Positions 1,290-48,601 of a stretch of 64,000 nucleotides of DNA are shown here, piece by piece; positions within the stretch are counted from its first letter, which is position 1, and every line of letters begins with the position of its first letter. The notes beneath the pieces were generated by a model. The model was given only the letters and a program-made list of their open reading frames with translations, searched no databases and was not told where the DNA came from. The stretch is from Macrostomum lignano (lineage: Eukaryota), in NCBI GenBank assembly GCA_002269645.1, contig NIVC01001312.1:54301-118300 (forward strand), read 5' to 3'. A program made the position numbers and the translations under genes.

Positions 1290-1863
1290 GCCTCCCAGAG
1301 TGTCAGTTGCTAGGCCAGCCTCCCAGATCCCCAGTTGCTGGGCCAGCCTCCCAGATCCTCAGTTGCTAGGCCAGCCTCCCAGATCCCCAGTTGCTGGGCC
1401 AGCCTCCCAGATCCTCAGTTGCTAGGCCAGCCTCCCAGATCCCCAGTTGCTGGGCCAGCCTCCCAGATCCCCAGTTGCTGGACAAGCCTCCCAGATCCTC
1501 AGTTGCTGGGCCAGCCTCCCAGATCCTCAGTTGCTGGGCCAGCCTCCCAGATCCCCAGTTGCTGGACAAGCCTCCCAGATTCCCAGTTGCTGGGCCAGCC
1601 TCCCAGATCCCCAGTTGCTGGACAAGCCTCCCAGATCCTCAGTTGCTGGGCCAGCCTCCCAGATCCTCAGTTGCTGGACCAGCCTCCCAGATCCTCAGTT
1701 GCTGGGCCAGCCTCCCAGATCCCCAGTTGCTGGGCCAGCCTCCCAGATCCTCAGTTGCTGGGCCAGCCTCCCAGATCCTCAGTTGCTGGACAAGCCTCCC
1801 AGATCCCCAGTTGCTGGGCCAGCCTCCTGGATCCCCAGTTGCTGGGCCAGCCTCCCAGATCCC
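1290..1863. repeat. 28-bp minisatellite (CAGTTGCTGGGCCAGCCTCCCAGATCCY), about 20 copies
   Basis: Direct tandem repeat visible in sequence; it explains the overlapping repetitive ORFs at 1335-2105. Confidence 0.95.
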
Positions 1864-1970
1864 TAGCTTCATCAGTCAGCACTGAACCCCGCAGGCAGCA
1901 GCAGCATTCGCACAGTGATGGCTTGAACGCATCGGCGGTGCACCAGCCCCACCACCACCCTGCCCCACCA

Positions 1971-2252
1971 TCTACCATACCAATCTGGCTATCTACCATA
2001 CCAATCTGTCTATCTACCATACCAATCTGCCTATCTACCATACCAATCTGCCTATCTACCATACCAATCTGTCTATTTACCATACCAATCTGTCTATTCT
2101 ACTAGACTAATCTGCCTATCTACCATGCCAATCTGTCTATTCTACTAGACTAATCTCCCTATTGACCATACCAATCTGTCTATTCTACTAGACTAATCTC
2201 CCTATTTACCATACCAATCTGTCTATTCTACTAGACTAATCTGCCTATCTAC
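1971..2252. repeat. 21/22-bp minisatellite (TCTACCATACCAATCTGTCTA and TTCTACTAGACTAATCTGCCTA variants)
   Basis: Six 21-mers followed by alternating 22/21-mer variants. Confidence 0.9.
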
Positions 2253-12106: not shown

Positions 12107-13260
12107 TCAATCAAAAACAGGCGATCCGCTGAATGAAGCGTGACGAGCCACAGCCTTCTTCAGATGCTCTCCGTTTACAAATTTTGAAAACACAGCCAGC
12201 TGAAAAGTATTTTTGCCGAGACATTTGATGATTCGGTAGACCCGCTCACTCCACGTCTTCTGTAGCTTTACGCCCTTCCTGTCGTCTCGGCGTGCATTTT
12301 GAAGTCTCACCCGATCTCGAACCTTGAACTTCTCAGCTCGAGTTCGTAAAGCTTCGTGGCGCCTTTTTATTCGCTGTTGGCTCAATTTGATTCTCCGCGC
12401 GATGAATTTTCGGGATGCAGCTCGCTGTTTGTTCTTCTCGATCATCCAACCCCGATTTACAGGTGCCAAATCGGGCTTCAAGGAAGTAGACAGCAGCGCC
12501 ACTGTCTCGTTGCCTAGCAAAGGTTCGAAGCTAAATGCGGCCTGGAATGGTAAAATTCCAGTGACTGAATGTCGTCGGCTACTGTAGGTCAGTTGAATTT
12601 CATTGAGCCTGGTGTCCCAGTCAGTTGGATTATCCGATGAGCGACACTTTCTTAATAGACTGATGCAGTTCTGGTTCAAGCGCTCGGTCCGTCCGTTAGT
12701 CTCTGGGTTATATGCGCTCGTCTTTCAGTTCCACCAGATTCTAGAAGGACGTCAATAATTGAGTTGCGGAACTCCCGTCCCTGATCGCTGAGGATGATGC
12801 GCGGCAAACCGAACAGTGCAAAGAGGTCCTTCAGTTCCTTCGCGATGGGCGCAACTTGGATGTTAGACAGAGCCCGGAACACAGAAAACTTCGTAAATTT
12901 ACAGCACACTGTCAGAATATACGAGTACTTGGATCCTGAATCAGTGGTTGTTGGCATCGTGATGCAGTCGACACAGAGAAACCAAAAAAGCCTGTTCGCA
13001 TTGTCCGGAATTTCAATCGGATGAATTTCGCTTTGCTTGGTTGAAAATTTCTTGTTGACAAATTCGCACTTGGCGCAAGCTTTCACAACGGATTTGGCTA
13101 TTGGCGATACAGGGAATTCAACGTCGCGAAGTATCGCGAAGTACGACGACGTAGAGAGGCTCAATGTGCTCTTTATACCTACGTAACTTCCCTGAATGTG
13201 CAAAGCTTGCATTTTGCTCTTGACTTCTGCGATGTCGTAAAAAACTTTGCGCTTCTCTTC
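12107..13260 (-). mobile_element. Ginger1/Gypsy-type DDE integrase remnant with one frameshift near 12720
   Basis: Zn-finger remnant (LH...CAKC), core LCVDCI and ILSDQGREF, then after the frameshift TSAYNPETNGRTERLN, WD...Y...HSVTG..PF and a GPY/F-like RKGVKLQKTWSERVYRI. No RT or RNase H is adjacent. Confidence 0.85.
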
Positions 13261-13487
13261 AGACCTCTTTCTCTGACTGTCCGCTTTGTTCTTGACTTGA
13301 CAGTACAACGAGCCTTCTTCTCTCCTCTCTCTTCTCTTTTCTACTCTCCTAGCCTAATTCATCTCTCCTCTCCTCTCGTCTCCTCTTTGCTCCTTTATTC
13401 CCTCGCCTCTCCCTTCTCCTATCTCCTTTCTTTCTTTTTATTACCTCTCATCTCCACCTTCTTCCGGACCGCAGTCATGCTCTAGGT

Positions 13488-13930
13488 CAGGGGTCGACAA
13501 ACTTTTTTACCTCAAGGGCCAGATCGAGAACCTGGCGCATGACTGCGGGCCAGAGAAAGGGAGAGAGAAGAGGCTAGTGAATGAAGGAGAAGAGAAGAGA
13601 TAAAATAGAGAGAGGTGGGGAGAGGAGAGACGGGAGGAGAGAGGAGGAAAGGGAGGAAGAAGATAGAGGAAAAGGGGGGAGAAAAGAGAGAGGAGGGAAA
13701 GGAGAGGAGAAGGGAGAGGAAAGGAGAGAACTAGCATTAGAACAGAATTCGAGAGAGGAGAGGAGAGGACAGGAGAGATAAGAAGGGAGGTGAGAGAAGA
13801 AAACTGAGAAGAGACAAACCTTGAGCGGGCCGGATTGCTATTGTGAAGTTTCAAAGGACCCGAGGGCCGGATAGAGAGGCTTTGCGGGCCGCATGTGGCC
13901 CGCGGGCCGGAGGTTGCCGCGCGACCCATG
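13488..13930. mobile_element. hAT (Charlie-like) MITE nested inside a truncated, oppositely oriented copy of the same family (outer copy about 13310-14137)
   Basis: Ends CAGGGGTCGACAAAC and GTTGCCGCGCGACCCATG; GGCCCGCGGGCC motif; purine-rich interior; 8-bp flanks CTCTAGGT / CTCTAGCC (NTCTAGNN-type target). Confidence 0.8.
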
Positions 13931-15666: not shown

Positions 15667-18600
15667 ATGAATAACTTATTGATGCTGATTTCTATTCTAT
15701 TTCTTGGCAGCATCTGCCAAAGCTCACATGGACTGATCTTAAAAATAGGCGTCATCATAGAGGCCGGAAACTTGAACGGCTCGCTCATCGACGTCGCCTT
15801 CGCCAGACGGGTCAACTACAACTGGAGAGTGCTGCAGGGCCACACACTTTCATATGTGCATGTCAATGTGAGCTCGTGCAGCTCACACCAGGCTGTCAGG
15901 ACTGGTGAGTTGAAGCATTTGCTACGCGACTCAATCGCTGCTCTGCTCAACCTGCTCAATCAATGCACACAATTGAAGCATGAATTGCACGAATGCAAGT
16001 ATGAGTGCGAGCTGTGAAACTGTGCATGTGTCTGTGTGTCTCGCTCCGCAGTGTGCTCGGAGAGCGGCCTGTCAGGTCTGATTGGCGTCGGCAGCTGCTC
16101 TCTGCTGGATGAAGTGAGCTCACTGAGCAAGTCTCTGCAGCTGCCGCTGATCGCCCTGCCGACTGGACTGTGCGACTCTGCTCGGCTGAGCAAAGGTAAC
16201 TGAGATCGATTTCTGACATCTTTCCATCATTTCTATCTGTATTCGGTTTCGACATGAAATCACGCGGAATTGCAGGCATGACCATCGTGGGCAGCCACAG
16301 CTCAGCAAACATCGTCGCTGCAGCAGCCTCCGTCATCACTTCGGACTCCGTAGCCCGTGATGTGGCTATTCTATACGATAAACAGCAGAGTGAGTGATAT
16401 TTTGACATTGATACAATAATTAGATGCCGTTTTTGAATGCGCTAGCCTCCATGACTTATTTAAGTTATTTAGAAACTTAATGTTAGGATTTTTAAATGCT
16501 ACGTATTGACTCACGCGTGTGCATCCGAATCGCTTCAGGTACAGCAGTGCTGCAGAACCTGCAGTCCAGTCTCTCCTCTGCCGGTGTGAGCAGTCTCACA
16601 TTCCGAGTGGACGACACTGTCAACGCTTCTGTTACTCCTGACCTGGTGCACCACCTCAAGCGGCTGGTCAAGAAGAAAGTGTTCAAGCTGCTGCTGCTCG
16701 CCTCTCCTCGCAATGCTCTCAGTGTGCTCAGGCTCGCCAGGGAAGCTGCAGTGATGCAGCAGAACTACTTCTGGCTCGTGCTCGACACCGGACTGTCCAA
16801 GGCCGATGTGCTCAGCGTGACGCCGGCGAACGCGAACGTCGCTCTGCTGAGAGGCAGCGTGTTCACCGAGTGCACAGCAGCAGTGATGGATGTGTTTCCT
16901 CAGTGCCAGACGGACTGGCTTCGGGTGAGCGTTTCATGTGTGCTGCTTGATGGCTGCAGGGATTCATCATGCAGCTCCGCACGTGTGCAATGCATGCCTC
17001 TGTCGCACTCGATCTCGCACTCGATCGTCGCATTCGCATTCGACAGACTCTGGACGCTCGCTTCGTAGACGCCGTAGAAGCCATGGCCAAGGCGCTCAAT
17101 GACTCGCTGCTGGATCCGGGATTCTCTCCCGGCAACGCCTCGTGTGCGCCTCTGCGCCACTGGACATCGGGCTCGACTGTGCTCAACAGACTCATGAGTG
17201 TGAGTGAGCTCACTAGCTAGCTAGCATTGACAAGCATTATTAGTTTCGAGCTGGTCTCTCCCCAATCCCTACTCGATGTGCAGATCAGCGACTATGACAC
17301 TCAGCGAGGCCTGATCTCGTTCAACAGCTTGACCAGACACTTCAGCTCGCAACGAGTCGAAGTGGTCGCGTCCTACAATGAGCTGTGGTCGTCTCCGGTC
17401 TCGATGCTGAGGTCAGCTCAGTTCGATGCATCGAGCGGAGCTCTGAGCAAGCAGTTTCGCTACAAGGGAGTCAGTTTGGCATTCCCCAACACCTTCATGG
17501 GGTTTAAGAACCAGACCATCATTGTTTGTACACCTGAGGTACTGTTTCTCATTAACGTTTATTTGAGACTATCTTTAGTGCACGTGCGTAGCTACGTTAT
17601 ATGTATACTAAACCGGAAATATATTTTTCAGAGCTCTCCACAGACGGTGTTTCAGCAGATATTTCCAAACAAGACAGTTATTATCAGCGGAATGGTTTCG
17701 GATGTGCTTAGTTTTTTAGCGTGGAAGCTTGAATTTCGGTTGGTGCTTTGTTATCTGTTTAGTTACTATAAAAATCCTAATTTTAATAAGTCCTCTATTT
17801 TTTGTAAGGTTCATCACTAAGGACTCTAACGACGGAAACTGGGGTACTCCTCAGAGTGATTCAATCTACTTTACGGGATGCGTTGGCGAACTACAAAGAG
17901 GAGTGAGTGGGATATAGCTGAATCTGAATGGCCGATTCACGTCAGCTATTGTTTCGCATCTTGCCTTCTTAAATTGCAGGAGGTTTCACTAGCGGCAGGA
18001 CCTTTCACAAAGACTGCCATCCGTGATTCCGTCATCGACTATTCCTCAGATCTGTTTCAAGACGCCAATGCAATTCTGCTGCCAAGACCGCCGCCGAAAT
18101 CGAAGATTTGGAATGTTTTTACTCCGTTTTCGATCGGGATTTGGCTTTTGATATTGTCGTGTGTGTTTCTGACAGCTTTTATCACCTGGCTATTTGCTTT
18201 CTTCTCACCGTTCACGGCTTACAATATGAATCTTGATTACGCAATCGCTGACGAGATCTGGCTGCAGGAGTATCTGTGGAGCATCATCGGCAGCTTTATG
18301 CAGCAAGGCCAGGACTTTTATCCGTTCTGTATGTCCTCGAGAACTGTTCTGGCTTTCTGGTGGATGCTCACCGTCATTATCTATGCTTCGTTTACAGGTG
18401 AAGCTTTGTCATATTTTCTTCTAGTTTGTTTGTTGGCGCTTTAGTATGCATCCAACTGCATTTTAAACCTGCATTTTGCAATTCCAGGTGATCTGACTGC
18501 CCACCTGACTGTGACGGTCATCGACTATCCAATTAAGTCCCTGCAGGATCTGGTGTCGCAGACAGCTATTAAGCCCTACGTATTCACTGGAACAAACCTG

Positions 18601-20240
18601 CATACTTTGCTGGCTCACTCAGAGTCCGGAATTTACAAACAGGTGGCCGACAAGATGATCGAGCTTGGACCCTACGACGACTGCCCATCCAAGGTGAGTA
18701 AATTCGGTTTTGTCTTTGCCATGACCGCTGCTGGCGCCCCCCCACTCCACGAATATGCATCAATCCACGAATACCATTAGGGGCGACGTTGTTATTGGCA
18801 TATTCGTGGAGTGGGGGGGGGCGCCAGCAGCGGTGATATACCGCGCCCCACAATGGCACGACCGAGATAGCACCCCTAAATCACATGCCCGAGATAGCAA
18901 CCCTCAATCACATGATCGAGGTAGCACCCCTCAATTACGTGCCCGAGATAGCATCCCATGCCCGAGATAGCATGCCCGAGATAGCATGCCCGAGATAGCA
19001 TGCCCGAGATAGCATGCCCGAGATAGCATGCCCGAGATAGCATGCCCGAGATAGCATGCCCGAGATAGCATGCCCGAGATAGCATGCCCGAGATAGCATG
19101 CCCGAGATAGCATGCCCGAGATAGCATGCCCGAGATAGCATGCCCGAGATAGCATGCCCGAGATAGCATGCCCGAGATAGCATGCCCGAGATAGCATGCC
19201 CGAGATAGCATGCCCGAGATAGCAGTCCTCAATGGCAAGCCAGAGATATCGCACCCTGCTATGACTTCGCCCTCGCCCCTCGCTGTCAACACTCCGCTGA
19301 ACCCCAAAGATGATCCCTAATAAAAATCCTTGACGACTTGAAGTCTGATCCGCATGAATTACAATTCCGGGCCTAAACTCTTTCCAGCCGGCACAACCCG
19401 ATCAGGCCTGCATAGTTGACTACTCATACTTGCTGGCGATTGCTAGGAAAAATTGCTCCCAGTTCTACCTGGCCGATGAGCTATTTAACACGGCCACTTT
19501 GGCTTACATGTTTCAGGAGGATGCCTACTTTGCCGATTTGTTTAATTTTCAGTAAGTTTCGCTTGGTTTAATTCAGTGATCACTTCAAATTGATAAATTC
19601 ATTTCTAAGATGAAGGTCTTAAGTTTAATATAACACTAAAATTGACTATTGTCTCAACTTCTAAACTTAATAATAGCAAATGAAGCAACTAGGTGTTTTA
19701 TCAAAATTGCACCCACACTGGAGTTCCAGTCGAAGTTCAGCTGTTCCCATCTCTGTAGTGTATGTTTTCTGGACAGATTTGTGAATGCAACTCGAACAAA
19801 ACACATTCTTGCTTCATTCGGAATTCGGAAGTCCAGAAGGTGAAATATTGGAAATTCTGTGCTAAAACAACTGATAAATTCCTAACTCGCTGATGAATTT
19901 GCAGTGAACTTTGCACTATTTGCGAGTGCAGCGTCCTTGCTTTACTTGCCTCTCTCTGTATTAAATATTTCAATAGTAATTTGTTAATTCGTCAACGCAC
20001 AGCATGCAGAAGCTGCATGAGAGCGGCCAGATACAGCGCTGGTTCGATAAGTACTGGTCCAGCGACAACACCTGCAGCGTTGGCGCATCAACCGAGGCGG
20101 CATCCATCAACCTGGAAGGCGCTGGCGGGTGCTTCATCACTAGCCTGATTTTGTACGTTGTGGGACTGCTAATCCTGCTGGTGGAGCTGGCCTGGACTAA
20201 GCTAGCCAAGAGACAGCCACTTGACTGTGTGATCTACTAA
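15667..20240 (+). CDS. iGluR/IR-like paralogue 3: 12 exons, intact, 838 aa
   Basis: Exons 15667-15904, 16052-16195, 16276-16389, 16539-16924, 17047-17199, 17284-17538, 17632-17738, 17809-17902, 17980-18397, 18488-18693, 19388-19551, 20003-20240. Exons 2-12 have the same lengths and phases as paralogue 2, with no internal stop. M3 reads SFTGDLTAHL and the protein ends KRQPLDCVIY*. Confidence 0.92.
18721..18836. repeat. GC-rich inverted repeat (about 35-bp arms, about 40-nt loop) in intron 10 of paralogue 3
   Basis: ACCGCTGCTGGCGCCCCCCACTCCACGAATATGC (18724-18757) pairs with GCATATTCGTGGAGTGGGGGGGGCGCCAGCAGCGGT (18798-18833). Confidence 0.85.
18860..19224. repeat. Degenerate 27-bp units grading into a perfect 14-bp minisatellite (GCCCGAGATAGCAT), about 19 copies
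   Basis: The perfect run spans 18960-19224 and is preceded by three to four longer diverged units with the same CCGAGATAGCA core. Confidence 0.95.
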
Positions 20241-22081: not shown

Positions 22082-25000
22082 ATGGCGGCCATCTTTTTTA
22101 TGTGCATATATCTCCTACTAAGCTGCACATCCGGCCTGGACTTCAAGATAGGCGTGATCACGGAGGCCGGAAGCTTGAACGGCTCGCTCATCGACATCGC
22201 CTTCGCCAGACGGGTCAACTACAACTGGAGAGTGCTGCAGGGCCACACACTCTCATATGTGCATGTCAATGTGAGCTCGTGCAGCTCACACCAGGCTGTC
22301 AGGACTGGTGAGTTGAAGCATTTGCTACGCGACTCAATCGCTGCTCTGCTCAACCTGCTCAATCAATGCACACAATTGAAGCATGAATTGCACGAATGCA
22401 AGTGTGAGTGCGAGCTGTGAAACTGTGCATGTGTCTGTGTGTCTCGCTCCGCAGTGTGCTCGGAAAGCGGCCTGTCAGGTCTGATTGGCGTCGGCAGCTG
22501 CTCTCTGCTGGATGAAGTGAGCTCACTGAGCAAGTCTCTGCAGCTGCCGCTGATCGCCCTGCCGACTGGACTGTGCGACTCTGCTCGGCTGAGCAAAGGT
22601 AACTGAGATCGATTTCTGACATCTTGCCACCATTTCTATCTGTATTCGGTTTCGACATGAAATCACGCGGAATTGCAGACATGACCATCGTGGGCAGCCA
22701 CAGCTCAGAAAACATCGTCGCTGCAGCCGCCACCGTCCTTACGTCAGATTCCATAGTTAGCAGTGTGGCAGTTTTCTTCGATAATCTGCAAAGTGAGTGC
22801 TGTGAATAAAGTAAAATCCTAGATAGCTCCAATGTTTGCAGTATATTTACGGATGTTTCTTCTATCAAAGTTCAAAAAGTCAGACATAACTAAAGTCTAT
22901 ACTTGATCACTGTAGGCACAACAGTGCTGCAGAACCTGCAGTCCAGTCTCTCTTCTGCCGGTGTGAGCAGTCTCACATTCCGAGTGGACGACACTGTCAA
23001 CGCTTCTGTTACTCCTGACCTGGTGCACCACCTCAAGCGGCTGGTCAAGAAGAAAGTGTTCAAGCTGCTGCTGTTCGCCTCTCCTCGCAATGCTCTCAGT
23101 GTGCTCAGGCTCGCCAGGGAAGCTGCAGTGATGCAGCAGAACTACTTCTGGCTCGTGCTCGACACCGGACTGTCCAAGGCCGATGTGCTCAGCGTGACGC
23201 CGGCGAACGCGAACGTCGCTCTGCTGAGAGGCAGCGTGTTCACCGAGTGCACAGCAGCAGTGATGGATGTGCTTCCTCATTGCCAGACGGACTGGCTTCG
23301 GGTGAGCGTTTCATGTGTGCTGCTTGATGGCTGCAGGGATTCATCATGCAGCTCCGCACGTGTGCAATGCATGCCACTGTCGCACTCGATCTCGCACTCG
23401 ATCGTCGCATTCGCATTCGACAGACTCTGGACGCTCGCTTCGTAGACGCCGTAGAAGCCATGGCCAAGGCGCTCACTGACTCGCTGCTGGATCCGGGATT
23501 CTCTCCCGGCAACGCCTCGTGTGCGCCACTGCGCCACTGGACATCGGGCTCGACTGTGCTCAACAGACTCATGAGTGTGAGTGAGCTCACTAGCTAGCAA
23601 GCATTGACAAGCATTATTAGTTTCGAGCTGGTCTCTCCCCAATCCCTACTCGATGTGCAGATCAGCGACTATGACACTCAGCGAGGCCTGATCTCGTTCA
23701 ACAGCTTGACCAGACACTTCAGCTCGCAACGAGTCGAAGTGGTCGCGTCCTACAATGAGCTGTGGTCGTCTCCGGTCTCGATGCTAAGGTCGGCTCAGTT
23801 CGATGCATCGAGCGGAGCTCTGAGCAAGCAGTTCCGCTACAAGGGAGTCAGTTTGGCATTCCCCAACACCTTCATGGGGTTCAAGAATGCTACAATTGTT
23901 ATTTGCACTCCTCAGGTAGCGTTGAACGAAAATATATAATGACTGGGTTGATAAAAACAACAATTCAAACGTCTATAGTGAATTTTTATAAATTTTAGAC
24001 TTCTCCAAAGACAGTCTTTATGGAGAAGTTTTTGAACAACACTGTTATTATATCCGGACTGACGCGAGACATTCTTGACATCTTGTCTTCAAGACTAGAT
24101 TTTAAGTGAGTTGTTCACTGAAATTCAGAAATTTAAATAATTATTTGTTCGATCAATTTTGATTGTTTTGTTTAAATGAAGGTTTATTACGAAAGACTCG
24201 GACGATGGAAATTGGGGCGCGCCGCAGGTGGGCTTGAGCTATTTTACTGGCTGTGTAGGAGAGCTTCAGAGAGGAGTGAGTTCGTTTCGCATTTGTGTTG
24301 TTTTGTGGAGAGCTTTGTGGAAACTTTGTGGTCAACAGTTATTATAAATGAAATATAATTGAATATTTGTTGAAACTTCAGATGGTTAACCTTTCTGCTG
24401 GACCATTTACAAAGACCGCCATCCGAGAGTCAGTGGTTGATTTTTCAACCCCTTTATTTCAAGAATCTAACGCCGTGCTGGTGGTAAAACCGGAGCCTCT
24501 TTCAAAAGCGTGGAACATTTTCATGCCATTCAGCTGGGATGTCTGGCTGGCCCTGGTCGGCTTTCTCGCGGTCTGCTCCATGGCAATGTGGCTATTAGCT
24601 TATTTCTGTCCATTCTCTGCCTACAACTTGGGCATGCAGTATGCAGTTGCTGACGAGCTCTGGTTGCAAGAGTACATCTGGAGCGCCATTGGAAGCTTTC
24701 TACAGCAAGGTCAGGACTTCTACCCATTTGCAATGTCGCCAAGAACTGTTATGTCTTTTTGGTGGATGTTTACCGTGATCATCTAAGGAGCATACACCGG
24801 TAGGTCTTTAAAAAACTTCGGCGTTTTTGGTGGTTTTGAGAATTATTTTGTTGAAACGATCGGTCAAAATTCGAAACCCTATTCTTTCTAGAGTGATGAA
24901 AGCTGGGGCGGTATTGAATTTTTAAGGATCAATAGTCAAAAAGCAGTACAATAAATTTTCACAGGCGATCTAACTGCTCACCTTACGGTTACTGTTACTG

Positions 25001-27308: not shown

Positions 27309-28263
27309 AACTAACTTGACTCTTTCAACAGGGGTTGCCAGGTTGATCTAAATGAAAGTTTAACATCTGCACCGCACTAAAATGCGTCTGTTTGAACAAA
27401 ACAGTTTGTTTAAATAATTAGGTTATTTAGAAATATTTGAGTTTTAATAATTAACTTTGAGAGATAAAATAAATAGAACAGTTAACATTTTTCGTATATT
27501 CGATACTGCTCCAGCACCAACACTACTTAACAGCGTATTGGATTTTGCTCATTCTATTGATAATATCATGTCTAACATTTATAATTACAGTTACCAATAT
27601 GATTTAAAAATAATATTGCTGTGCATTCAATGGCAATTATGTACAGTAAGCAAATTAAGTTTTGCCTGCATGAATTAAAAAAGCGCAATTGCATATCTAG
27701 CTGGGACTTTATTCGTCGCGCACAAAGTAAAAAATGACTGGAAAAGAACAGAAAACTTACAATACTGATGCAAAAATGCAACATGCTATACAAAAAAGCG
27801 TAGAAGAGCACCATAAAGGTTTAAAAAACAGCGTTTGTGATTTTTTGCGATTAGTAGTTGGTACACTGAAGTGTTGACTTACATAGCAAGTTCGACTGTT
27901 TTATGTACACAAACACTCGTATGTACATGACTTGGAGTTGGTTGGGCCAATCACAGCAGCTCTCAGTGACTTTGAGTACGGCTGGCAAACGCGCCCATAC
28001 AGCCAATCAGAATTAGGGCAGTGAGCAGTCTGCGACCAACTCCGGTTGCTCGGGTGAACTCAGCTGCGTTGATGAAGTAGCTCTGCAATACATACAACGA
28101 GAGGTAGTGTGGTTGACTTGATTTAATTGTAAGTTACGTCAAGACAACTTTTCCATCTCAATACAGGCCCAGACACAAATTATTTAATGCAGAAAACCTC
28201 ACCTTATCGATCAAGACAACCCCACTTAATTCATCTGGACAAACCCATCCCATCGATCTAGAC

Positions 28264-28565
28264 CAGGGCTCGGCAAACTCCAGCCCGTGAGCCACATGCG
28301 GCCTGCGAAGCCTCTCTATCCGGCCCTCGGGTTCTTTGAAGCTTTACAATAGCAATCCGGCCGGCTCGAGGCTTGTGTCTCTTCTCAGCTCTTTTCTGTC
28401 TTATCTCCTCTCTTATCTCCTCTTCTCTCACTTCTCGTCCTCTATTCTCTTCTGTTCTCTCTACTCTCTTCTCTATTCCCTCTTCTCTCTCTTCCTCTTC
28501 TGGCCCGCAGTCATGCTCTGGATTTTCTATCTTGCCCTGGAGGTAAAAAATTATTCCGACCCCTG
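28264..28565. mobile_element. hAT MITE of the same family as 13488-13930, complete, with 8-bp TSD
   Basis: CAGGGCTCGGCAAAC...ATTCCGACCCCTG flanked by ATCTAGAC / ATCTAGGC. Confidence 0.85.
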
Positions 28566-29129
28566 ATCTAGGCAAAACAACCGCTTTGATCCAAACAGCC
28601 CTAACCCATTGGTTTACATGTAGATACTCCAGTTGTCTGGGAAACCCAATCCCACTGATCTAGACAACCCCACCCTATTGATCAAGACCAATTCATCAAG
28701 ACGACCCTACTCGACCCTACCCCAGTCTACAAGGCATTGTTATGAGTACAAAACTATATTTTAAATCGTTCAACAAGCATAAGATTATAAGCCATCTCAC
28801 CCAGCCTCGAACAATCACAATGGGAGCAATGTGGCAGCAGAGCAGTTCGGAGCAACAACCGACAATGAGCCCCAGAGCCACAGCATTGCACTGCAGCACC
28901 GCCTTGGCAGCCAGTTCAGAGCAGAGAATCAACAGAAACGCTACGCGACATCGGACTGACTCAAAGCCGGTCAGATGATGGTTGAGACAGTGACGTAATT
29001 CGGCTTTACCTGATACTTGAGGCAGGCTCATCTGCGATAGTTCACGGGCGACAGTCGTGATGACTCTGGGAGGCTCAAATGCATTATACTAAAAATGGTC
29101 TGTCGGTATCTATCTAGGTCTAATACGTA

Positions 29130-29462
29130 AAGGGGTCGGCAAACTCGAGCCCGCGAGCCCCATGCGGCCGGCAAAGCCTCTCTATCCGGCCCTCGGGTCC
29201 TGTGCAATTTCACAATAGCAATCCGGTCCACTCAAGGTTTTTGTCTCTTCTCAGCTCTCTTCTCAATAATCTCCTTTCTCTTCGCTTTTCTCTCCTCTCC
29301 TATTCTTTTTATTCTCCTCTATTCTTATCTCCTTTATTCCCTCGCATCACCTTTCTCCTTTCTCTTTTCCCTTTATTACCTCTCCTCCCTCCCTCCTCTG
29401 GACCGCAATCATGCGCTAGGTTATTTATCTGGCTCTGGACGTAAAAATTTTGCCGGCCTCTG
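29130..29462. mobile_element. hAT MITE of the same family, diverged copy
   Basis: AGGGGTCGGCAAAC...GCCTCTCTATCCGGCCCTCGGG...pyrimidine-rich core...TTTGCCGGCCTCTG. Confidence 0.75.
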
Positions 29463-29631
29463 CTATTCAAGTGCAATTTCGTGCGTGTCCACATAGTATC
29501 CGTGTGCATGCTCAGGGGTCAGCAGAATGGACATGTACATGAATAACTGTTTGCCTCTTTGCTGGTTTGCGCAGTTGCCTAAAGCCCCCTACTTGCAAAC
29601 TGAATAACGACAAAGTAACAAAGCGCCATGT

Positions 29632-31036
29632 CTACAGTAGGGCCCGCTCGAGCCCTTCCCTGAACATCCAGCTCAGCCTCACCTCCCGAGCCCTCCTAGC
29701 GGCCGCGCCGCCAGCCCAGGTGGCGCCGAACTCGTCCGCAAATCTGGCCAATTTCCGCGCCAACCATCGAGTCTTGTCAGCGGCAGTGCGACCGCTACTG
29801 ACTTCCGGCTGGGGGCACCTGAGGCAAGTTATAGTTATAGCTTTTACTTATAGCTAGTTTTAGTTATAGCCATATTGGCTTGGATTTGTTCGGTAAATTT
29901 TGTAATTAAACCTTTCCCTTGTCGCCCGGAACAAGTAAAAGTAGTCTTAGCGTGCCTAAATCGAAAAAGAAATTTTAAATGGGGAATGTTACTCTTGCCT
30001 TATATTTGGCTACAGTTCCGTATTTAACTGGTAGTAGTTCCACTGTTTACCTGTATCCGCTCTATAAGAAATTTAGATTGAGTGCCGGGGCCACAATAAA
30101 TACTCAAATGTACATTGTTGACGCTCACTCCAACCCCCAAATACTCAGTTTTGAGTCTAGTCTGTCTTGATGCTAATTTTGAAGCCTAAACGCCCCTCTT
30201 TGTGGCTTAGAAGCAGAGAAGCTAATTTTAGCCGTGTGCTGCGTAGGTGAGGGGGCTTAATAAGAAAATAGTCGTAAATTTGTAAATTCATATCTTTCAC
30301 GACCTTATACTGGCTTCAGTTTATTCCATGGCTCTATAGGCCATGGGGCAGCTGCAAAGAGGCCATGGTTCAATTCAAAATCAAAGGAAAGCTGGTGAGA
30401 CGCCAATTCCCAAAGGGGAGATGCCAAAATAGGCTGAAAAGGAAAGCTGATGACTTAGACAGGAAATCGTGACATCAGTGATAGCAAATGATATCTTTGT
30501 TTTACACATCTAACAAGAAGCCAAAACAAATAGTTTTTTTAATTAATCGTTCATTGGGTGCCTCCCCAGAGGGGGGTTGTTATTGCTAGTCCACGTATAC
30601 TAAAACAAAACTAAATTTTAGCTCACCAGCCATCGCAGTCACAGTTGGCTTGCCGCATCATAAACAACGCCCTCTCTCGCACATCAGCGTTCATACTACT
30701 CAGCCGCTGCAACAGCATCAGTCTTAGGCTAAGCTTAGCTATATCCGCGCTGCGTTTCTCAACAGATCGAACTTGACTGACAGTGCGAGACTGCGGCTGA
30801 CTTGACGGTGTTCGCACGCGCAGCTGGGTCAGATTAAACGCCGAACTCCAAACCGACCCAGCAGTGCCGTCATTGTCATTGGTGACACTGGACATGCTGC
30901 TGTTATTCGCATAGGCGGTGCTGCGCAATCGACGACGCTTGAGTAGTAGGCTGCCTGACTGATTAGCAGGACTCGGCCTGTCGGGTGATACGCGAGCCTG
31001 AGTACTGTCGTTGTTGTTTCCATTTGTTTCAGACAT
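29632..31036 (-). CDS. Two-exon 198-aa orphan protein with a C-terminal BH3 motif (candidate BH3-only protein)
   Basis: Exon 1 is 31036-30627 (ATG, donor TG|GTGAGC) and exon 2 is 29818-29632 (acceptor TGCCTCAG|G, stop TAG). Phase 2 joins them in frame: ...ANCDCDGW/CPQPEVSSGRTAADKTRWLARKLARFADEFGATWAGGAAARRAREVRLSWMFREGLERALL*. Confidence 0.72.
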
Positions 31037-31146: not shown

Positions 31147-31154
31147 TTTATATA
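31147..31154 (-). promoter_or_regulatory. Candidate TATA box of the BH3-motif gene
   Basis: Minus strand TATATAAA lies about 110 nt upstream of the ATG at 31036, with a GC-box-like GGGTGGGCGCGGG about 40 nt further upstream. Confidence 0.35.
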
Positions 31155-31690
31155 CGAGCGTATGTATGCACGTGCTTTGCTAGGAGGAGGGGTGGGCGCG
31201 GGGTTGAGACTTGACTGATGCTATTTTTAGCACTCGAAAACCCAGCCAAGAAGACCTGAGATACGGGATAAGAGTGGGGGTATGATCTAAAAAAAGAACT
31301 AATGTGATCATTTGTTAATTTAGCTCTAGCTGGTTTAAATGTGCGCTCGCACTCGCTAGCTATGCAAGATAGATATGGTGAGCTGAATTGAAAATTATAC
31401 TAGTGACGCGATATTCTCATATGAATGTCGTCAACAAAGCATGACCCTAATGTTCCTATTCGAATAAATACATGTACGTTTCCACTACAGCAGCAGCAGT
31501 GTTGTCTCTCAGTCTGTAAAGAAGCCACTTAAACGGATCAATCAATTGGACATTGCATTACTAACGCAAGTAATAACAAAACTAGTATATATGACAAAAC
31601 AAAATGACAAAACTTTGTCATTTATCATACAAAACTAGTATGACAAACGACAAAACTTAGTAATGACAAAACTACGACTGTATAGAAGAA

Positions 31691-31774
<84 letters not shown>

Positions 31775-31775
31775 G

Positions 31776-31822
<47 letters not shown>

Positions 31823-31837
31823 GTAGATAGATAGATG

Positions 31838-31878
<41 letters not shown>

Positions 31879-31879
31879 G

Positions 31880-31922
<43 letters not shown>

Positions 31923-31966
31923 GTAGATAGATAGATAGATAGATAGGTAGATAGATAAATAGATAA

Positions 31967-32013
<47 letters not shown>

Positions 32014-32074
32014 GATAGATAGGTAGATAGATAGATAGGTAGATAGATAGATAGATAGATAGGTAGATAGATAA

Positions 32075-32156
<82 letters not shown>

Positions 32157-32169
32157 GGATAGATAGATG

Positions 32170-32213
<44 letters not shown>

Positions 32214-32250
32214 TATCCATATATACCTATAGGTAGGTAGGTAGATAGAT
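31691..32250. repeat. (GATA)n microsatellite with GGTA interruptions
   Basis: Visible tetranucleotide run. Confidence 0.98.
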
Positions 32251-32764
32251 GGAAAATCCGCTCTGCATGTCACAACATGCCATGGGTTGGATTTCCCTAT
32301 TTCTTTCCAGGCCCAATAGTCCTCTCAACACCCCTTTAGCCAGACTATTTTTCACCCGCAGACAAAAACAAAGAGTCGAAACAAACAGCTGCCGAGTCCA
32401 AGGCAATAAAAATGTGGACAGAAGACACGCCTGTACAGACAGAGGGTCCGTAATTTGTCTCGGGTGACAAATAGTGCAAAAAGGACCCAGTTAAGCCAAG
32501 CCAAACCGATCTGCGGAACTTGTAAAGTCCGCTCTGCACTTAATTAGATCCGCTACTAAAATGTGGGTCTAGATAGGAAATTTGGAACAGCAAGGTAAAC
32601 AAGCGATAGCAAAATTCAGTCTGTTTTAAAAATTTGTTAAAAAACCATTTGCACAATTTACTTAAATGACAATCTGGACCGAATTAATATCCTGGCCCTG
32701 TGTTATCAAGTTAAAATACACTACGAAAATTAACTTAATCTGAAAAGCTGACTTCTACGAAAGT

Positions 32765-33585
<821 letters not shown>

Positions 33586-36755: not shown

Positions 36756-38788
36756 GAGGCTAGGAGCATAGGACAGGACTGTATTGCGACTTGGAGAGCG
36801 CGGAAGCTGTGAAAATTTTGTCAGTATATTTATATCGATTTTTTGGATAGCCAACCGTCTCCAAGAGCAACACGTCCGTGGCAGGCTAGATACATGTAGG
36901 ATTGGTCTGCTCATCCATCGGTATCCCTCGTTGCAAACCGCACATTAGCCAGCAACCTCCCCAGCCTTTCTTCTCAGTCAATGCTCTTCGATCTCTGCAT
37001 CGTCTAACGCTGTTCTTGAGGGCGATAGTAATTTATTGGAATACAAAGAAGATTGGCCGATAAAAAATATCAATGAGTCAGTTGACTTACAGTCCCTGTA
37101 AAGTGACTCGATGTCAGAGACATCCGCTGACGGTTTTCGGCATTTATCGACGCTGTTGGAAAACGGGTATTTTTACATTACACCGATTGTCATGCCGTAG
37201 TCAGAAATCAGAGGCAAGTTGGTTATGCTGAGATTCACGAGTTGTTATACCATCGAGCATCATATATATTTACATTGTAACACGCAAGTGAAGGGACAGG
37301 CAACGTGTCGTGCTAAAACAAGATCTCATTCGTGTGCAACAATCTACAAGAGCTCACGCCGGGCACGCCCTTACACTATGAGTACAGTATTTGTACACTA
37401 AACATGTAGAGTTAGTCAACAGAAACGCATGGATCGTTAGCTCATCAAAAGTGACGCAACACAGCGGCGCCACACCGATGTTTAGCGGAAGCATTGGTGT
37501 AATAATGTAAAAACACATTTGCCAGCAGCGTCCATCGACATCGGGACCGTCAGGCACGTCAGGCGGACGTCGGAATGTTGCACGTGTGTGGGTCGGTGAA
37601 TAAGTCGATTTTATCTATTAATATACAAGGCTAAATTAGTCGATTAGATTACTGGGCCGGAGTAAACGTATGGATAAACTAGCTGAAACGTTAGCGCTGT
37701 ACTGTTTGACTAAATTACACTCATTAAAAACAACTCTTGTTAGCCTCAAATTATCCTACTATAACAAGTAGACACTGGAGCACATAAATAAATAGGAACT
37801 AAGCCATCTAACATTACTATATATAATAGCTTTGGCAAGAGTAAACCTGAAACTCAAATAGCTAATCAGTGCGGTAAACAGTGAGACAGTGCAGCTATGG
37901 GACGGTTCCACAAGTCGAGTGGACCATCCAGACAGAGTCCCGGCAGTTTACTGATGGCACAAATGATAAATCAGCAGTTACAAAGCTCAGTATAAGTACT
38001 GGCGTTTGGACACGGAGCTGGCTGGCTCAAAGCACTCACACCACTTGGCGTCTTCCACCCAGCGATTAATTAGTCTTTGCTCTCATCTCTGCCCCTTACA
38101 TCTCTATCTATCTTCCCCACGCATGCGTAGAAGCGAGAGCAGCACGGGACAAATGTAAGCAAAACTGGCCGTGAAGCGGAGGATTTCCACCGGCAGAGTG
38201 AGGCGCATTAAATTATCCCTCCGCTTCCCCTCTCTGTCGCCATCATGTCCCCCCTCCCCTGTCTCTTGCCTCTCCTACTCAAACGCCAAAAAATTCAGGG
38301 TCAAAGCCAATTGGTGTCGTCCACAGCTTTGCGTCTCTTCCCGGAGGACCGACTAAGGCCCGGCCACCCCAGCAGCTCCCGCGGTGGCACCCAATCAGAA
38401 GAGTGCGCTGGCAGGTTTTCTGGAGTGTCGTCAGTTCAGGACAAGTCCTGGCCTGTGATAGACGAGGAAGAAGCATTTTTAAAAATAGGATGCAGGCAAT
38501 GAGCCGCTGTGCTGCCTTTTTGCCTATTTGTGTTCTTGTACGCTCCCGGAGACTGGAACAGGTGGTTGGCTAATCTGCTAAAGCCTCTAATTAAGCTGTT
38601 TTGTATAACTAATCTCTGCAATGCAAGTTGTAACCTTGCTCTTTACACTTTCACACTTTGCCGTCCACAGTTGCCGATATTAGATCTACAACTTTCAACG
38701 CATTTTTGCTGAGAACTTGTCCAAGAGCCGGTGAGGGGTGAGTCCGTCTGACTAACTTTACGCTTCTCATCTGAATACCACAATATCT

Positions 38789-39066
<278 letters not shown>

Positions 39067-40781
39067 TCTACTGTCTGTGTGTTTACGTGGACTTTTTGGA
39101 AGTTCAGTAGCCTCGTTAGCTGGACCACCCGGTGTAGGTAGACCACTTAGGTGGACCACCAAATAATTTTGTCTCTGGTGGGGTTAAGACGTTGATGAGG
39201 ATCTCACATTAATATCAGGCGGGTCAAGAAAGGCTTAAGCAATTTTGGGATGTCTAGCATGGTTTTTTCCAAAGTTATTTGCATTTCAGTTTAGCTGGAC
39301 CTCCAGCCTGGTCTACCTAAACCGAGCGAGTCTGGTCCACGTAAACCGAAACATTTTAGAAAATTTTTCGAAAATCGTCTGTTTGTGTCTGTTTGTGTCT
39401 GTTTGTGTCTGTTTGTGTATAGCAGTTATTAAGCATAGATTCAATGCAAAACTGATTTTTTTACAGATCATTACCTTACGAACAAAGGGCTATGTTAGCA
39501 TCATATTATGACCGCTACTGGCTTTAAAACAATATGCGTTCAGTTCTTTGACATTCAAGTAGGTACCAGGTTAATTTAAAATTCTGAAACCTCGTATGCG
39601 AAATGAATTTGATTAGCTCAGTAATTTCGGTATCGTACCCTGAGCACAGACTCACAGAGTAAGACACCAACGTAAAGAAATCCAATTCGCGAACCAGATC
39701 AAACGATAAAGACTCCGAGACAAGAAAGATATTTAAGTGAAGCCTAAATAGTATTCTTCAATGACTTCTCAAGAACTCCCAGTGGTCCTTGATAGCCACA
39801 CTGTGTAAATGCGAATTTCTGAGGCTCTACCATTACACAAGAAGAAAATAGCAACTTCATGAATTAAGTGCTTGCCAATTCTATCCTACACACTATGGGA
39901 TATCCTGTTCTATCCTCCTCCAATGTTGGAAGAAGAAGATCCTAAGCTGCAGCCTTTCAAGTGCAAAGTTGAAGATGCAATTTACCTAAGTGAAAAGGAC
40001 AATTCATACACGTACATGCAAAAGATTTGATCAACAGGGCGCAATTAAGAAGGGCCTTTTAGCTAGCGATCGGGTCTCTGACTCTCTAGCAAAAGGTCGA
40101 CTTGATTGCGGTCCCAGTAAAACTAAGAACGCATTAACAGTCAGCCTAACACTCACTGTCTGTTTGGTCCACGTAAACACATGTGCAGGAGTATAGGGTT
40201 GGAACAGACAGACAGACAGACCTCCCTTTCTATAATTGGCTGGTTAACACTTAGGAGGATAGATCCACCCCAACAATGGGACCGACCGCAGCCAATAGGA
40301 AACCCGCAAGCGTTCTGAAGGTAAGACAGTGGAGAGAGGGATATATAATGTCTAAGCGGGTGGTCCACGTAAACCATGGCGTAGTGAGACCAGACACAGA
40401 CAGTTTAAAAGAAAGTACTTATAATCCATACTATACATCTCTAAAGGATTGCAATTGTATAAATTAGAACGGTTTTTTTATACTTATTAGGTCTAATGTT
40501 AATCCTTACTCCAAGTTTCATCCATATATAAATTTATTGTGCCAAAAACTGTAATCTACAACCAAAATATGATGACCCGCAAAAAAGGACGCCAAGCCTA
40601 AAATAAAAACTTAAAATCACCGTCGCAAAAAGCCACTGCGAAATCGAAGAAGCCGCATCGCCTGGTAAAAATCATCAGTCTGCTCGCAAATCCGTCGACA
40701 CCGAGACCAGAAAAGTGAGTTTCGTTTGATGATCTCAAAGTAGCTAGCTGCAAGGCCTGCAACTCAATTGCTGTAGAGAAG

Positions 40782-48308: not shown

Positions 48309-48601
<293 letters not shown>

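What the first reader, a model, noticed from the sequence alone, without database searches (positions are those of the whole stretch)
29632..31036. Hidden two-exon gene encoding a candidate new BH3-only (Bim-like) apoptosis regulator
Seen: the 137-aa minus ORF at 31036 ends at a strong donor (TG|GTGAGC, 30626). It splices in phase 2 onto a 187-bp exon at 29818 that the ORF track misses. That exon reads W-L-A-R-K-L-A-R-F-A-D-E-F-G-A-T-W (W to F at 29766-29728). Established: the BH3 consensus is h-x-x-x-L-x-x-h-(G/A)-D-x-h, and Bim reads WIAQELRRIGDEFNAYY, so the match here extends beyond the core to the flanking Trp and the C-terminal aromatic. The rest of the protein is Ser/Asn/Pro/Arg-rich and looks disordered. 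It has no BH1/BH2 (no NWGR), and the BH3 sits near the C-terminus followed by a short amphipathic tail, as in BH3-only proteins. There is also a KRRRLR basic patch and a CDCDGWC cysteine cluster at the exon junction. Inference: BH3-only genes escape homology searches and few are known outside vertebrates, so this may be an undescribed initiator of the Bcl-2 pathway in this lineage.
Basis: partly seen in the sequence, partly recalled or inferred. Interest (0 to 1): 0.82.

Follow-up and report, generated by a model that had tools for sequence, protein, structure and literature searches.

The report
Cryptic Bcl-2-family gene, not BH3-only
The flatworm gene and its Bim-like BH3 motif are real and already annotated as a hypothetical protein, but the fully spliced transcript adds two exons that look like the rest of a very divergent Bcl-2-family protein, so it is probably an unrecognised member of that cell-death family rather than a new BH3-only protein.

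Summary
The window is Macrostomum lignano genome (contig NIVC01001312.1). Its 198-aa product is identical to GenBank PAA69557.1, a "hypothetical protein" from an RNA-seq-derived annotation, so the gene is not hidden.

The BH3-like motif WLARKLARFADEFGATW is present. A 12-residue BH3 pattern is expected 0.025 times per window. Bim BH3 peptides are the best single-stretch matches in the PDB, though not significant (E about 0.4).

The same locus also encodes a four-exon, 298-aa isoform identical to UniProt A0A1I8J054. Its extra 116 residues align co-linearly with the Bcl-2 core from the BH1 arginine to the C-terminal membrane anchor. No composition-matched shuffle out of 2000 reached its score.

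Intron 3 lies exactly after the TGG codon of the aligned BH2 tryptophan. This is the hallmark BH2-splitting intron of Bcl-2 genes.

Against this, Pfam finds no Bcl-2 domain, NWGR is absent, AlphaFold models are low-confidence, and I found no orthologue.

My best reading (about 0.62) is a cryptic, divergent Bcl-2-family gene with BH3, BH2 and a tail anchor but a degenerate BH1. The 198-aa form would be a BH3-only-like splice variant, as with BCL-G. Function is untested.

The parts
31147..31152 (-). TATAAA, candidate TATA box 116 nt upstream of the start codon
   Evidence: Pattern scan and sequence reading. Function is inferred only.
30627..31036 (-). Coding exon 1 (aa 1-136 plus 2 nt). It holds the Ser/Asn/Arg/Thr-rich, coil-predicted N-terminus with KRRRLR (30940-30923), then predicted helices covering about aa 85-130 (alpha1-like).
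   Evidence: The ORF and the donor CTG|GTGAGC. Identical to the annotated proteins P0001 and P0004. AF2 secondary structure is low-confidence.
29819..30626 (-). Intron 1 (808 nt, GT-AG, phase 2)
29683..29818 (-). Coding exon 2 of the fully spliced (298-aa) isoform, aa 137-182. It carries the BH3 motif.
   Evidence: Acceptor CCTCAG|GTG and donor GAG|GTGAGG. The translation equals P0001.
29716..29766 (-). BH3 motif W155-LARKLARFADEFGAT-W171. h1-h4 are L156, L160, F163 and F167, with the small residue and Asp at A164-D165.
   Evidence: The 12-residue pattern is seen once against 0.025 expected. Bim BH3 peptides are the best single-stretch PDB matches. hhalign aligns it to the BAK BH3.
29632..29682 (-). 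Read-through of the exon-2 donor into intron 2.
29032..29682 (-). Intron 2 (651 nt, GT-AG, phase 0). It contains three AATAAA signals (29377-29372, 29338-29333, 29313-29308) that could end the short transcript, and one copy of a dispersed repeat (29131-29279).
28801..29031 (-). Coding exon 3 (aa 183-259). It holds predicted alpha4, a BH1 remnant SVRCR (R211 at 28947-28945), the hydrophobic alpha5-alpha6-like hairpin, and BH2-like ...VRGW. The exon ends exactly after the TGG of W259 (28803-28801).
   Evidence: Splice sites. hhalign P = 0.004-0.02. hmmsearch gave 10.0 and 7.3 bits with 0 of 2000 shuffles as high. It is the top-scoring of 773 window ORFs against the Bcl-2 HMM.
28083..28800 (-). 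[quoted passage not shown] It contains the second copy of the dispersed repeat (28265-28413).
   Evidence: Donor GGC TGG|GTGAGA. The same arrangement, GGC TGG|GTGAGT, was verified in a primate BAK gene. Literature: PMC7527217 and PMC8998228. Repeat.
27963..28082 (-). Coding exon 4 (aa 260-298 plus stop): SYFINAAEF... followed by the C-terminal hydrophobic segment RLLTALILIGCMGAFA (28031-27984) and then SRTQSH. This looks like a tail anchor.
   Evidence: It aligns to the family's TM region in hmmsearch.
27708..27713 (-). AATAAA poly(A) signal about 250 nt after the stop codon of the long isoform

Best explanation
The locus is one of at least three nearly identical copies of a Macrostomum lignano gene. 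[quoted passage not shown]

Proposed layout of the long form:
- a disordered N-terminal extension (aa 1-~90);
- an alpha1-like helix;
- a canonical BH3 helix (aa 155-171);
- a degenerate BH1 in which only the arginine survives (SVRCR in place of NWGR);
- a hydrophobic alpha5/alpha6-like hairpin;
- a BH2-like RGW split by the family's hallmark intron;
- a C-terminal tail anchor.

That form keeps the N-terminus, alpha1 and BH3 but loses BH1, BH2 and the anchor. It is a BH3-only-like isoform, comparable to BCL-GS versus BCL-GL or BCL-XS versus BCL-XL.

Inferred mechanism, not shown:
- The long form sits in the mitochondrial outer membrane or ER through its tail anchor. It takes part in Bcl-2-type BH3/groove interactions that control outer-membrane permeabilisation in flatworm cells.
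- The short form would expose its BH3 constitutively and act as a ligand for pro-survival Bcl-2 proteins.
- Whether the long form is pro- or anti-apoptotic cannot be told. Loss of the NWGR Trp and Gly argues weakly against a classical pro-survival groove.

Shown here: the gene models, the motif, the profile similarity, the intron position and the hydropathy. Inferred: the fold, the localisation, the binding and any role in cell death.
For: 1. Gene models. The window encodes both isoforms with canonical GT-AG sites. The products are identical to deposited proteins, and the annotation is RNA-seq-derived.

2. BH3. The 12-residue pattern is seen once against 0.025 expected per window. Bim BH3 peptides are the best single-stretch PDB matches.

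3. Profile similarity downstream of BH3.
- hhalign of the flatworm alignment against six human Bcl-2-family proteins aligns aa 210-288 to BAK 126-198, P = 0.004.
- With aa 85-298 the alignment is co-linear from alpha1 through BH3, BH1 and BH2 (aa 103-265 to BAK 34-183). Shuffles reached this score in 3 of 300 (full) and 8 of 300 (block) trials.
- Exons 3-4 alone, which are independent of the BH3 motif, score 20.1. Only 2 of 400 and 3 of 400 shuffles reached that.
- hmmsearch --max gives 10.0 bits with the 6-sequence HMM and 7.3 bits with a 90-sequence HMM. In each case 0 of 2000 composition- or block-matched shuffles were as high, and the reversed sequence scored about -1.
- All methods give the same register: R211 to the BH1 Arg, and W259 to the BH2 Trp.
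- The offsets are consistent with the BH3 register: L160 to L78 gives 82, and C210 to G126 gives 84.

4. Intron 3 falls exactly after the TGG of W259, in phase 0. [quoted passage not shown] I verified it directly in a Saimiri BAK gene (GGC TGG|GTGAGT). The chance that one of three introns hits that position is about 3 in 897.

5. Hydropathy. The N-terminus is hydrophilic, aa 210-262 are hydrophobic, there is a dip, and then a C-terminal 16-residue hydrophobic segment flanked by Arg-Arg and SRTQSH.

6. In an unbiased scan of all 773 stop-to-stop ORFs of the window with the Bcl-2 HMM, the exon-3 ORF ranks first.

7. Hint only. In two Foldseek searches with low-confidence models, 8 of 31 and 12 of 49 weak hits are Bcl-2-family chains. 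BOK was rank 2 in one and BCL-XL rank 1 in the other.

8. Flatworms are reported to have Bak and Bcl-2 homologues, and cytochrome c release and apoptosis have been linked to them (PMC8998228; PMC11463336).
Against: - Pfam PF00452 does not match at E up to 10. The absolute profile scores (7-10 bits; hhalign probability 2-8%) would not survive a database-wide search.
- The most conserved family signature, NWGR, is absent, and GGW is RGW.
- phmmer of aa 91-298 against the PDB finds no Bcl-2 protein.
- Both AlphaFold2 single-sequence models are low-confidence (pLDDT 41.7 and 44.5). All Foldseek hits have E > 1 and TM-scores of 0.1-0.3.
- No orthologue outside M. lignano was found, so conservation of the key residues could not be tested. 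The exhaustive HMMER scan used only the 198-aa isoform, so the C-terminal core was never searched exhaustively.
- The paralogues are 97-99% identical, introns included. Purifying selection on exons 3-4 is therefore not demonstrable: exon versus intron substitutions were 10/897 against 45/2126 (Fisher P = 0.07).
- Shuffles are an imperfect null for natural amphipathic or hydrophobic helices.
- The other two introns do not coincide with BAK introns.
- The presence of Bcl-2 partners in M. lignano itself was not verified.
Confidence: 0.62

Rival explanations
1. The gene is a genuine BH3-only protein. The functional product is an intrinsically disordered protein with a Bim-like BH3. It binds pro-survival Bcl-2 proteins and initiates apoptosis. 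The C-terminal exons of the long isoform provide only a membrane anchor, as in Bik, Hrk or Bim, and their resemblance to the Bcl-2 core is fortuitous.
For: - The BH3 motif is canonical and closest to Bim peptides.
- The 198-aa model is the deposited model at this exact locus.
- Three AATAAA signals lie 255-320 nt downstream of its stop codon, inside intron 2.
- There is no Pfam Bcl-2 domain and no NWGR.
- The N-terminus is disordered.
- Potential BH3-only proteins are reported in schistosome genomes, so the class is reported in flatworms (PMC8998228).
Against: - The residues between BH3 and the anchor match the Bcl-2 BH1-alpha5-alpha6-BH2 segment in the correct register. This exceeds all 2000 shuffles in each of two hmmsearch tests and nearly all in hhalign.
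- The exon boundary after the aligned Trp codon is the family's hallmark intron.
- About 95 residues of predicted helices lie between BH3 and the anchor, with spacing like BAK. This is not what a simple tail-anchored BH3-only protein looks like.
- Two of the three annotated GenBank loci carry the four-exon model.
Confidence: 0.2
2. The BH3-like motif and the weak Bcl-2-like similarity are both chance features of a lineage-specific orphan protein. That protein, possibly a small membrane protein, would have nothing to do with Bcl-2-regulated cell death.
For: - BH3 is a short, degenerate linear motif. The 7-residue core occurs at chance frequency. By my own rough scaling, a few chance 12-residue matches are expected in a whole proteome.
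- No database method gives a significant hit.
- Hydrophobic helices give spurious weak profile hits, for example DUF2568 at E = 0.024.
- The structure models are uninformative.
- There is no orthologue and no functional data.
Against: It requires four independent coincidences in one gene: a full 12-13-residue BH3; a co-linear core match with empirical P < 0.001; an intron exactly after the aligned BH2 Trp codon (about 0.3-1%); and a C-terminal tail anchor at the family's usual distance.
Confidence: 0.15
3. Exons 3-4 are not translated in vivo. They would be spliced 3'-UTR exons, or a transcript-assembly artefact in a repeat-rich region. The long ORF would then be an accident.
For: - Exon 3 lies between two copies of a dispersed repeat.
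- The exon-3 region is open in several frames.
- Exons 3-4 are unusually Cys-rich (9 Cys in 116 aa).
- Selection on them cannot be shown.
Against: - All three introns have canonical GT-AG sites, and the frame stays open through two junctions to a stop followed by AATAAA about 250 nt later.
- The same four-exon ORF is intact in three loci. The only exonic indel is a 3-nt in-frame one, whereas the introns carry many indels.
- The Bcl-2-core similarity and the BH2 intron would be unexplained.
Confidence: 0.03

Closest known systems
Multi-motif Bcl-2-family proteins (BAK/BAX/BOK, BCL-2/BCL-XL/MCL-1; Pfam PF00452)
   Same: - The order BH3, then the BH1 position, then the alpha5/alpha6 hydrophobic hairpin, then BH2, then a C-terminal TM anchor.
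- Spacing like BAK: BH3 Leu to BH1 Arg is 51 residues against 49, and BH1 Arg to BH2 Trp is 48 against 50.
- An intron exactly after the BH2 Trp codon, in phase 0.
- A last exon of 39 aa encoding the anchor, against 34 aa in the Saimiri BAK gene.
   Different: - No Pfam hit.
- NWGR is replaced by SVRCR, and GGW by RGW.
- There is a long disordered N-terminal extension.
- The core helices are Cys-rich.
- Similarity is detectable only by a targeted profile test.
- Whether it is pro- or anti-apoptotic is unknown.
BCL-G (BCL2L14) and BFK (BCL2L15), the atypical BH3+BH2 members
   Same: The long isoform has BH3 and BH2 without a recognisable BH1. A shorter isoform with a different C-terminus retains BH3 and lacks BH2, as with BCL-GS versus BCL-GL (PMC10244440).
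   Different: - I detected no sequence homology to them.
- The flatworm protein has a C-terminal hydrophobic anchor; from my own recollection, not checked here, BCL-G lacks one.
- BCL-G's role in apoptosis is itself disputed.
Bim (BCL2L11) BH3
   Same: W-h-A-x-x-L-x-R-h-[GA]-D-E-F-x-A-x-aromatic. That is 8 of 17 identical residues and several conservative ones. Bim peptides are the best single-stretch PDB matches.
   Different: - The similarity is confined to 19 residues (E about 0.4).
- There is no Pfam hit of any kind at E up to 10, so no Bim-family domain.
- The same D-E-F...aromatic continuation also occurs in the BH3 region of BCL-XL and BCL-2 (the sequences used), so it is not specific to BH3-only proteins.
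Schistosome BH3-only protein sjC and the schistosome Bcl-2 pathway (Lee et al. 2011, as cited in PMC8998228)
   Same: The same phylum. It shows that BH3-dependent, tripartite Bcl-2 regulation has been described in flatworms.
   Different: The exhaustive HMMER scan with the 198-aa isoform found no schistosome or other flatworm relative. The sjC sequence and the original paper were not available to me, so I made no direct comparison.

Membership tests
BH3-only proteins (functional class) | A BH3 motif fitting h1-[GAS]-x-x-h2(L)-x-x-h3-[GAS]-D-z-h4 | tested here: met
   L156-A-R-K-L160-A-R-F163-A164-D165-E-F167. The pattern is seen once against 0.025 expected per window.
BH3-only proteins (functional class) | No other BH motifs and no Bcl-2 fold outside the BH3 | tested here: inconclusive
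   This holds for the 198-aa isoform. The 298-aa isoform of the same gene has a BH1-Arg/alpha5/alpha6/BH2-like segment with the BH2 intron and a tail anchor.
BH3-only proteins (functional class) | Binds the groove of pro-survival Bcl-2 proteins and kills in a BH3-dependent way | not testable with these tools
   This needs binding and cell-death assays. Complex modelling was not possible with the tools here, and the M. lignano partner proteins were not retrieved (one search returned mammalian proteins only).
Bim orthologue | Homology to Bim outside the BH3 (a Bim-specific Pfam domain) | tested here: not met
   No Pfam family of any kind matched at E up to 10. The PDB match is limited to 19 residues.
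Multi-motif Bcl-2 family (PF00452) | A match to Pfam PF00452 above the gathering score | tested here: not met
   No PF00452 hit at E up to 10 for the 298-aa protein or its C-terminal parts. The six human controls score 94-116 bits.
Multi-motif Bcl-2 family (PF00452) | BH1 signature NWGR | tested here: not met
   The aligned segment is S-V-R-C-R. Only the Arg (R211) is retained.
Multi-motif Bcl-2 family (PF00452) | BH2 signature with the conserved GGW | tested here: inconclusive
   R-G-W259 aligns to G-G-W in all profile alignments, followed by S-Y-F-I (compare D-T-F-V in BCL-XL). One Gly is lost.
Multi-motif Bcl-2 family (PF00452) | The BH2-splitting intron immediately after the Trp TGG codon | tested here: met
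   Exon 3 ends GGC TGG|GTGAGA, in phase 0. The same is seen in Saimiri BAK. The feature is described in PMC7527217 and PMC8998228.
Multi-motif Bcl-2 family (PF00452) | A C-terminal hydrophobic tail anchor encoded by the last exon | tested here: met
   RLLTALILIGCMGAFA followed by SRTQSH, in exon 4. Hydropathy peak at aa 277-292. Membrane insertion itself was not tested.
Multi-motif Bcl-2 family (PF00452) | Statistically supported, co-linear similarity to the family profile | tested here: inconclusive
   Targeted tests are positive: hmmsearch 10.0 and 7.3 bits with 0 of 2000 shuffles each, and hhalign P = 0.004-0.02. However, hhalign probability is only 2-8%, and the scores are below any database-wide threshold.
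Multi-motif Bcl-2 family (PF00452) | The eight- to nine-helix Bcl-2 bundle fold | tested here: inconclusive
   AF2 predicts nine helices after the disordered N-terminus, but at pLDDT 42-45. Foldseek hits to BOK, BCL-XL, BAX and MCL-1 all have E > 1 and TM < 0.3.

The most novel reading that the evidence does not exclude
One flatworm gene would encode two things, switched by use or non-use of the donor right after the BH3 exon. One is a tail-anchored, highly divergent Bcl-2-fold protein that sequence databases cannot recognise. The other is a soluble BH3-only-like killer. That would be a living example of the proposed origin of BH3-only proteins from multi-motif ancestors by loss of downstream exons. 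It would also add a hidden member to a flatworm Bcl-2 repertoire currently described as very limited.
Probability: 0.25. Interest if true: 0.7.

Novelty: new member of a known kind. Interest (0 to 1): 0.45.

Why it matters
Flatworm Bcl-2 networks are described as very limited, with one Bak and a few Bcl-2-like genes (PMC11463336). BH3-only proteins outside vertebrates and nematodes are hard to find (PMC8998228).

If this reading is right, homology-based surveys miss at least one Bcl-2-family gene in Macrostomum lignano, present in three or more near-identical copies. That gene would also produce a BH3-only-like isoform.

M. lignano has transgenesis and RNAi and is used to study stem cells, regeneration and the germline. 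The prediction can therefore be tested directly, and it could expose a new regulator of cell turnover in a regenerating animal.

It also gives a practical recipe for finding cryptic family members: a BH3 motif, plus the intron after the BH2 Trp codon, plus a tail anchor. If the reading is wrong, the finding is just one more chance BH3-like motif in an orphan protein.

Tried and rejected
- Pfam scans of the short isoform, the long isoform and sub-regions found nothing relevant. The only hits were weak and spurious (DUF2568, Imm35).
- The word-indexed protein search and the exhaustive HMMER scan of 1.84 billion representatives, both with the 198-aa isoform, found only M. lignano copies. There was one spurious bacterial repeat protein.
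- The word-indexed search with the C-terminal 123 aa returned nothing, not even the protein itself, so it is uninformative.
- My last protein search, with a Bcl-2 profile, was meant to recover flatworm Bcl-2 proteins. It listed only mammalian BAK, BOK and MCL-1. M. lignano partner proteins therefore remain unverified.
- The metagenome contig scan found no relatives.
- dN/dS between the three genomic copies has no power, because the copies are 97-99% identical, introns included.
- AlphaFold2 without an alignment was run twice, and both models are low-confidence. Foldseek on them gave no significant match.
- I did not feed AlphaFold an alignment seeded with Bcl-2 proteins, because that would be circular.
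- phmmer of aa 91-298 against the PDB gave only chance carboxylesterase hits.
- Lee et al. 2011 (schistosome sjC) is not held in the library, so I made no direct comparison with the known flatworm BH3-only protein.
- No paper mentions the gene identifiers.
- I rejected the idea that the other two introns are also conserved with BAK. They are 15-21 residues off.
- I rejected the CDCDGWC cluster as a constrained feature, because it varies between paralogues.
Full report
**Origin of the window and status of the gene**

The predicted 198-aa product has one database relative cluster, all from Macrostomum lignano. Locus L001 is contig NIVC01001312.1 of assembly GCA_002269645.1 and is 100% identical to the window over 13.4 kb.

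GenBank models of this assembly were built from RNA-seq transcript assemblies with TransDecoder ORFs (PMC5730564).

**The motif**

WLARKLARFADEFGATW lies at 29766-29716.

- The short BH3 core is as common as chance: 7 observed against 8.4 expected per window.
- The full 12-residue pattern occurs only here, against 0.025 expected.
- The Bim-like 13-residue pattern occurred in 0 of 200 simulated windows.

A 40-residue query against all PDB sequences returns Bim BH3 peptides as the best single-stretch matches, at a non-significant E of 0.4-0.9. Pfam finds nothing. By my own rough scaling to a proteome, a few chance 12-residue matches are expected, so the motif alone is only suggestive.

Other deposited models of the same gene are 297-299 aa: UniProt A0A1I8J054, and PAA72952.1 and PAA63232.1 from two paralogous loci.

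In the window, the donor GAG|GTGAGG at 29683 joins exon 29031-28801, which joins exon 28082-27963. All sites are GT-AG. The product is identical to A0A1I8J054. An AATAAA follows the stop by about 250 nt.

Three AATAAA signals inside intron 2 could terminate such a short transcript. Both isoforms contain the BH3.

**Nature of the extra 116 residues**

*Overall shape.* They are hydrophobic and predicted helical. They end in RLLTALILIGCMGAFA-SRTQSH, which looks like a tail anchor.

I validated them with Pfam (94-116 bits to PF00452), and BAK was 100% identical to a database protein.

*hhalign.*
- The flatworm alignment aligns aa 210-288 to BAK 126-198 with P = 0.004.
- With aa 85-298 as query the alignment runs co-linearly from alpha1 through BH3, BH1 and BH2. 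Shuffles reached its score in 3 of 300 (full) and 8 of 300 (block) trials.
- Exons 3-4 alone, which are independent of the BH3 motif that drew attention to the locus, score 20.1. Only 2 of 400 and 3 of 400 shuffles reach that.

*hmmsearch --max.*
- The 6-sequence profile gives 10.0 bits and a 90-sequence profile gives 7.3 bits.
- No shuffle out of 2000 reached the real score in either test. The reversed sequence scored about -1.

*Register.* It is the same every time: R211 falls on the BH1 arginine and W259 on the BH2 tryptophan. The spacings closely match BAK's.

*Unbiased scan.* Among all 773 stop-to-stop ORFs of the window, the exon-3 ORF is the best match to the Bcl-2 profile.

**Gene structure**

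Exon 3 ends exactly after the TGG of W259 (GGC TGG|GTGAGA, phase 0).

[quoted passage not shown] It also describes an exon ending at the GGW tryptophan, with the TM region on the next exon (PMC8998228).

I confirmed this directly on a Saimiri BAK gene, where the exon ends GGC TGG|GTGAGT and the last exon encodes VAAL...TM. The protein alignments know nothing about introns, so this line of evidence is independent. The chance of one of three introns hitting that position is about 0.3%. The other two introns do not coincide with BAK introns.

**Evidence against**

- PF00452 does not match.
- NWGR is replaced by SVRCR, and GGW by RGW.
- phmmer against the PDB finds no Bcl-2 protein.
- Both AlphaFold2 single-sequence models are low-confidence (pLDDT 41.7 and 44.5).
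- Foldseek gives no significant hit. Bcl-2-family chains are conspicuously frequent among the weak hits (8 of 31 and 12 of 49; BOK rank 2, BCL-XL rank 1). I count this only as a hint, since those proteins are over-represented in the PDB and the hits may be seeded by the BH3 itself.
- No orthologue was found. The exhaustive scan used only the short isoform.
- The three genomic copies are too similar to reveal selection.
- I could not retrieve M. lignano's own Bcl-2 or Bak proteins. The existence of the pathway in this species is inferred from other flatworms.

**Interpretation**

The most economical reading is a cryptic, highly divergent Bcl-2-family gene. It has BH3, a degenerate BH1, a BH2 with its hallmark intron, and a tail anchor.

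The closest analogues in architecture are BCL-G and BFK. There the long isoform has BH3 and BH2 without BH1, and a short splice isoform keeps only the BH3 (PMC10244440). I put this reading at about 0.62.

The alternatives:
- A true tail-anchored BH3-only protein: about 0.2.
- Chance motifs in an unrelated orphan: about 0.15.
- Non-translated 3' exons: a few per cent.

Whether the long form promotes or prevents death cannot be decided. Loss of the NWGR Trp and Gly argues weakly against a classical pro-survival groove.

**Novelty and score**

No database or paper assigns this gene to any family. If the reading holds, it is a new, very divergent member of a known family, not a new kind of system.

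It is of moderate interest to the cell-death and flatworm fields, and it is directly testable in a transgenic model. The evidence is entirely computational, and each individual score is weak. I score interest at 0.45.

Noticed in passing
window 4608-6534, 16496-18444, 22903-24786 (+ strand): Three tandem, closely related gene copies. Their ORFs match the ligand-gated ion channel domain (Pfam PF00060, E from 1e-11 to 3e-16), so they look like ionotropic glutamate-receptor-like genes. The upstream 180-190-aa ORFs of the three copies are nearly identical to one another.
   Followed up: partly
window 12107-13308 (- strand): A remnant of a retroelement. One ORF has an integrase core domain (rve, E = 1.6e-6, just below the Pfam cut-off).
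   Followed up: partly
window 28265-28413 and 29131-29279; also ORFs at 13507-13929: A dispersed repeat, with two copies 84% identical over 149 nt. The copies sit in introns 3 and 2 and flank exon 3 of the gene. ORFs with similar translations (…IAIVKL[QH]RTRGPDREA…) occur at both copies. A similar serine/leucine-rich ORF, on the opposite strand to the copy at 29202-29444, occurs near 13.5 kb.
   Followed up: partly
window 1335-2105, 18876-19307, 31635-32273, 32767-33347, 38643-39162, 48384-48845: Long simple or tandem repeat arrays that read as repetitive ORFs (SIYL, SVCL, TDRQ, PRSSVAGPASQI and similar). One array starts only about 600 nt upstream of the gene's start codon. This fits the reported 15% simple and tandem repeat content of this genome (PMC5730564).
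   Followed up: no
paralogous loci L002 (NIVC01001050.1) and L003 (NIVC01001862.1): The whole gene, introns included, is present in at least three copies that are 97-99% identical. This fits the hidden polyploidy and assembly redundancy of the DV1 line. One copy has C134W in the 'CDCDGWC' cluster and R147L just upstream of the BH3. The BH3, R211, W259 and the anchor are identical in all copies.
   Followed up: yes
UniRef entry A0A1I8J172 (P0005): One N-terminally truncated copy of the protein is named 'DUF4476 domain-containing protein' in UniRef. The current Pfam scan of the near-identical full-length protein gave no such hit at E up to 10, so the name looks like a stale or marginal automatic annotation.
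   Followed up: partly
tool behaviour: The word-indexed protein search with the C-terminal 123 aa of the long isoform returned no hit at E up to 10. The database nevertheless contains that exact sequence inside P0001. Negative results of that search for hydrophobic queries should not be trusted.
   Followed up: no
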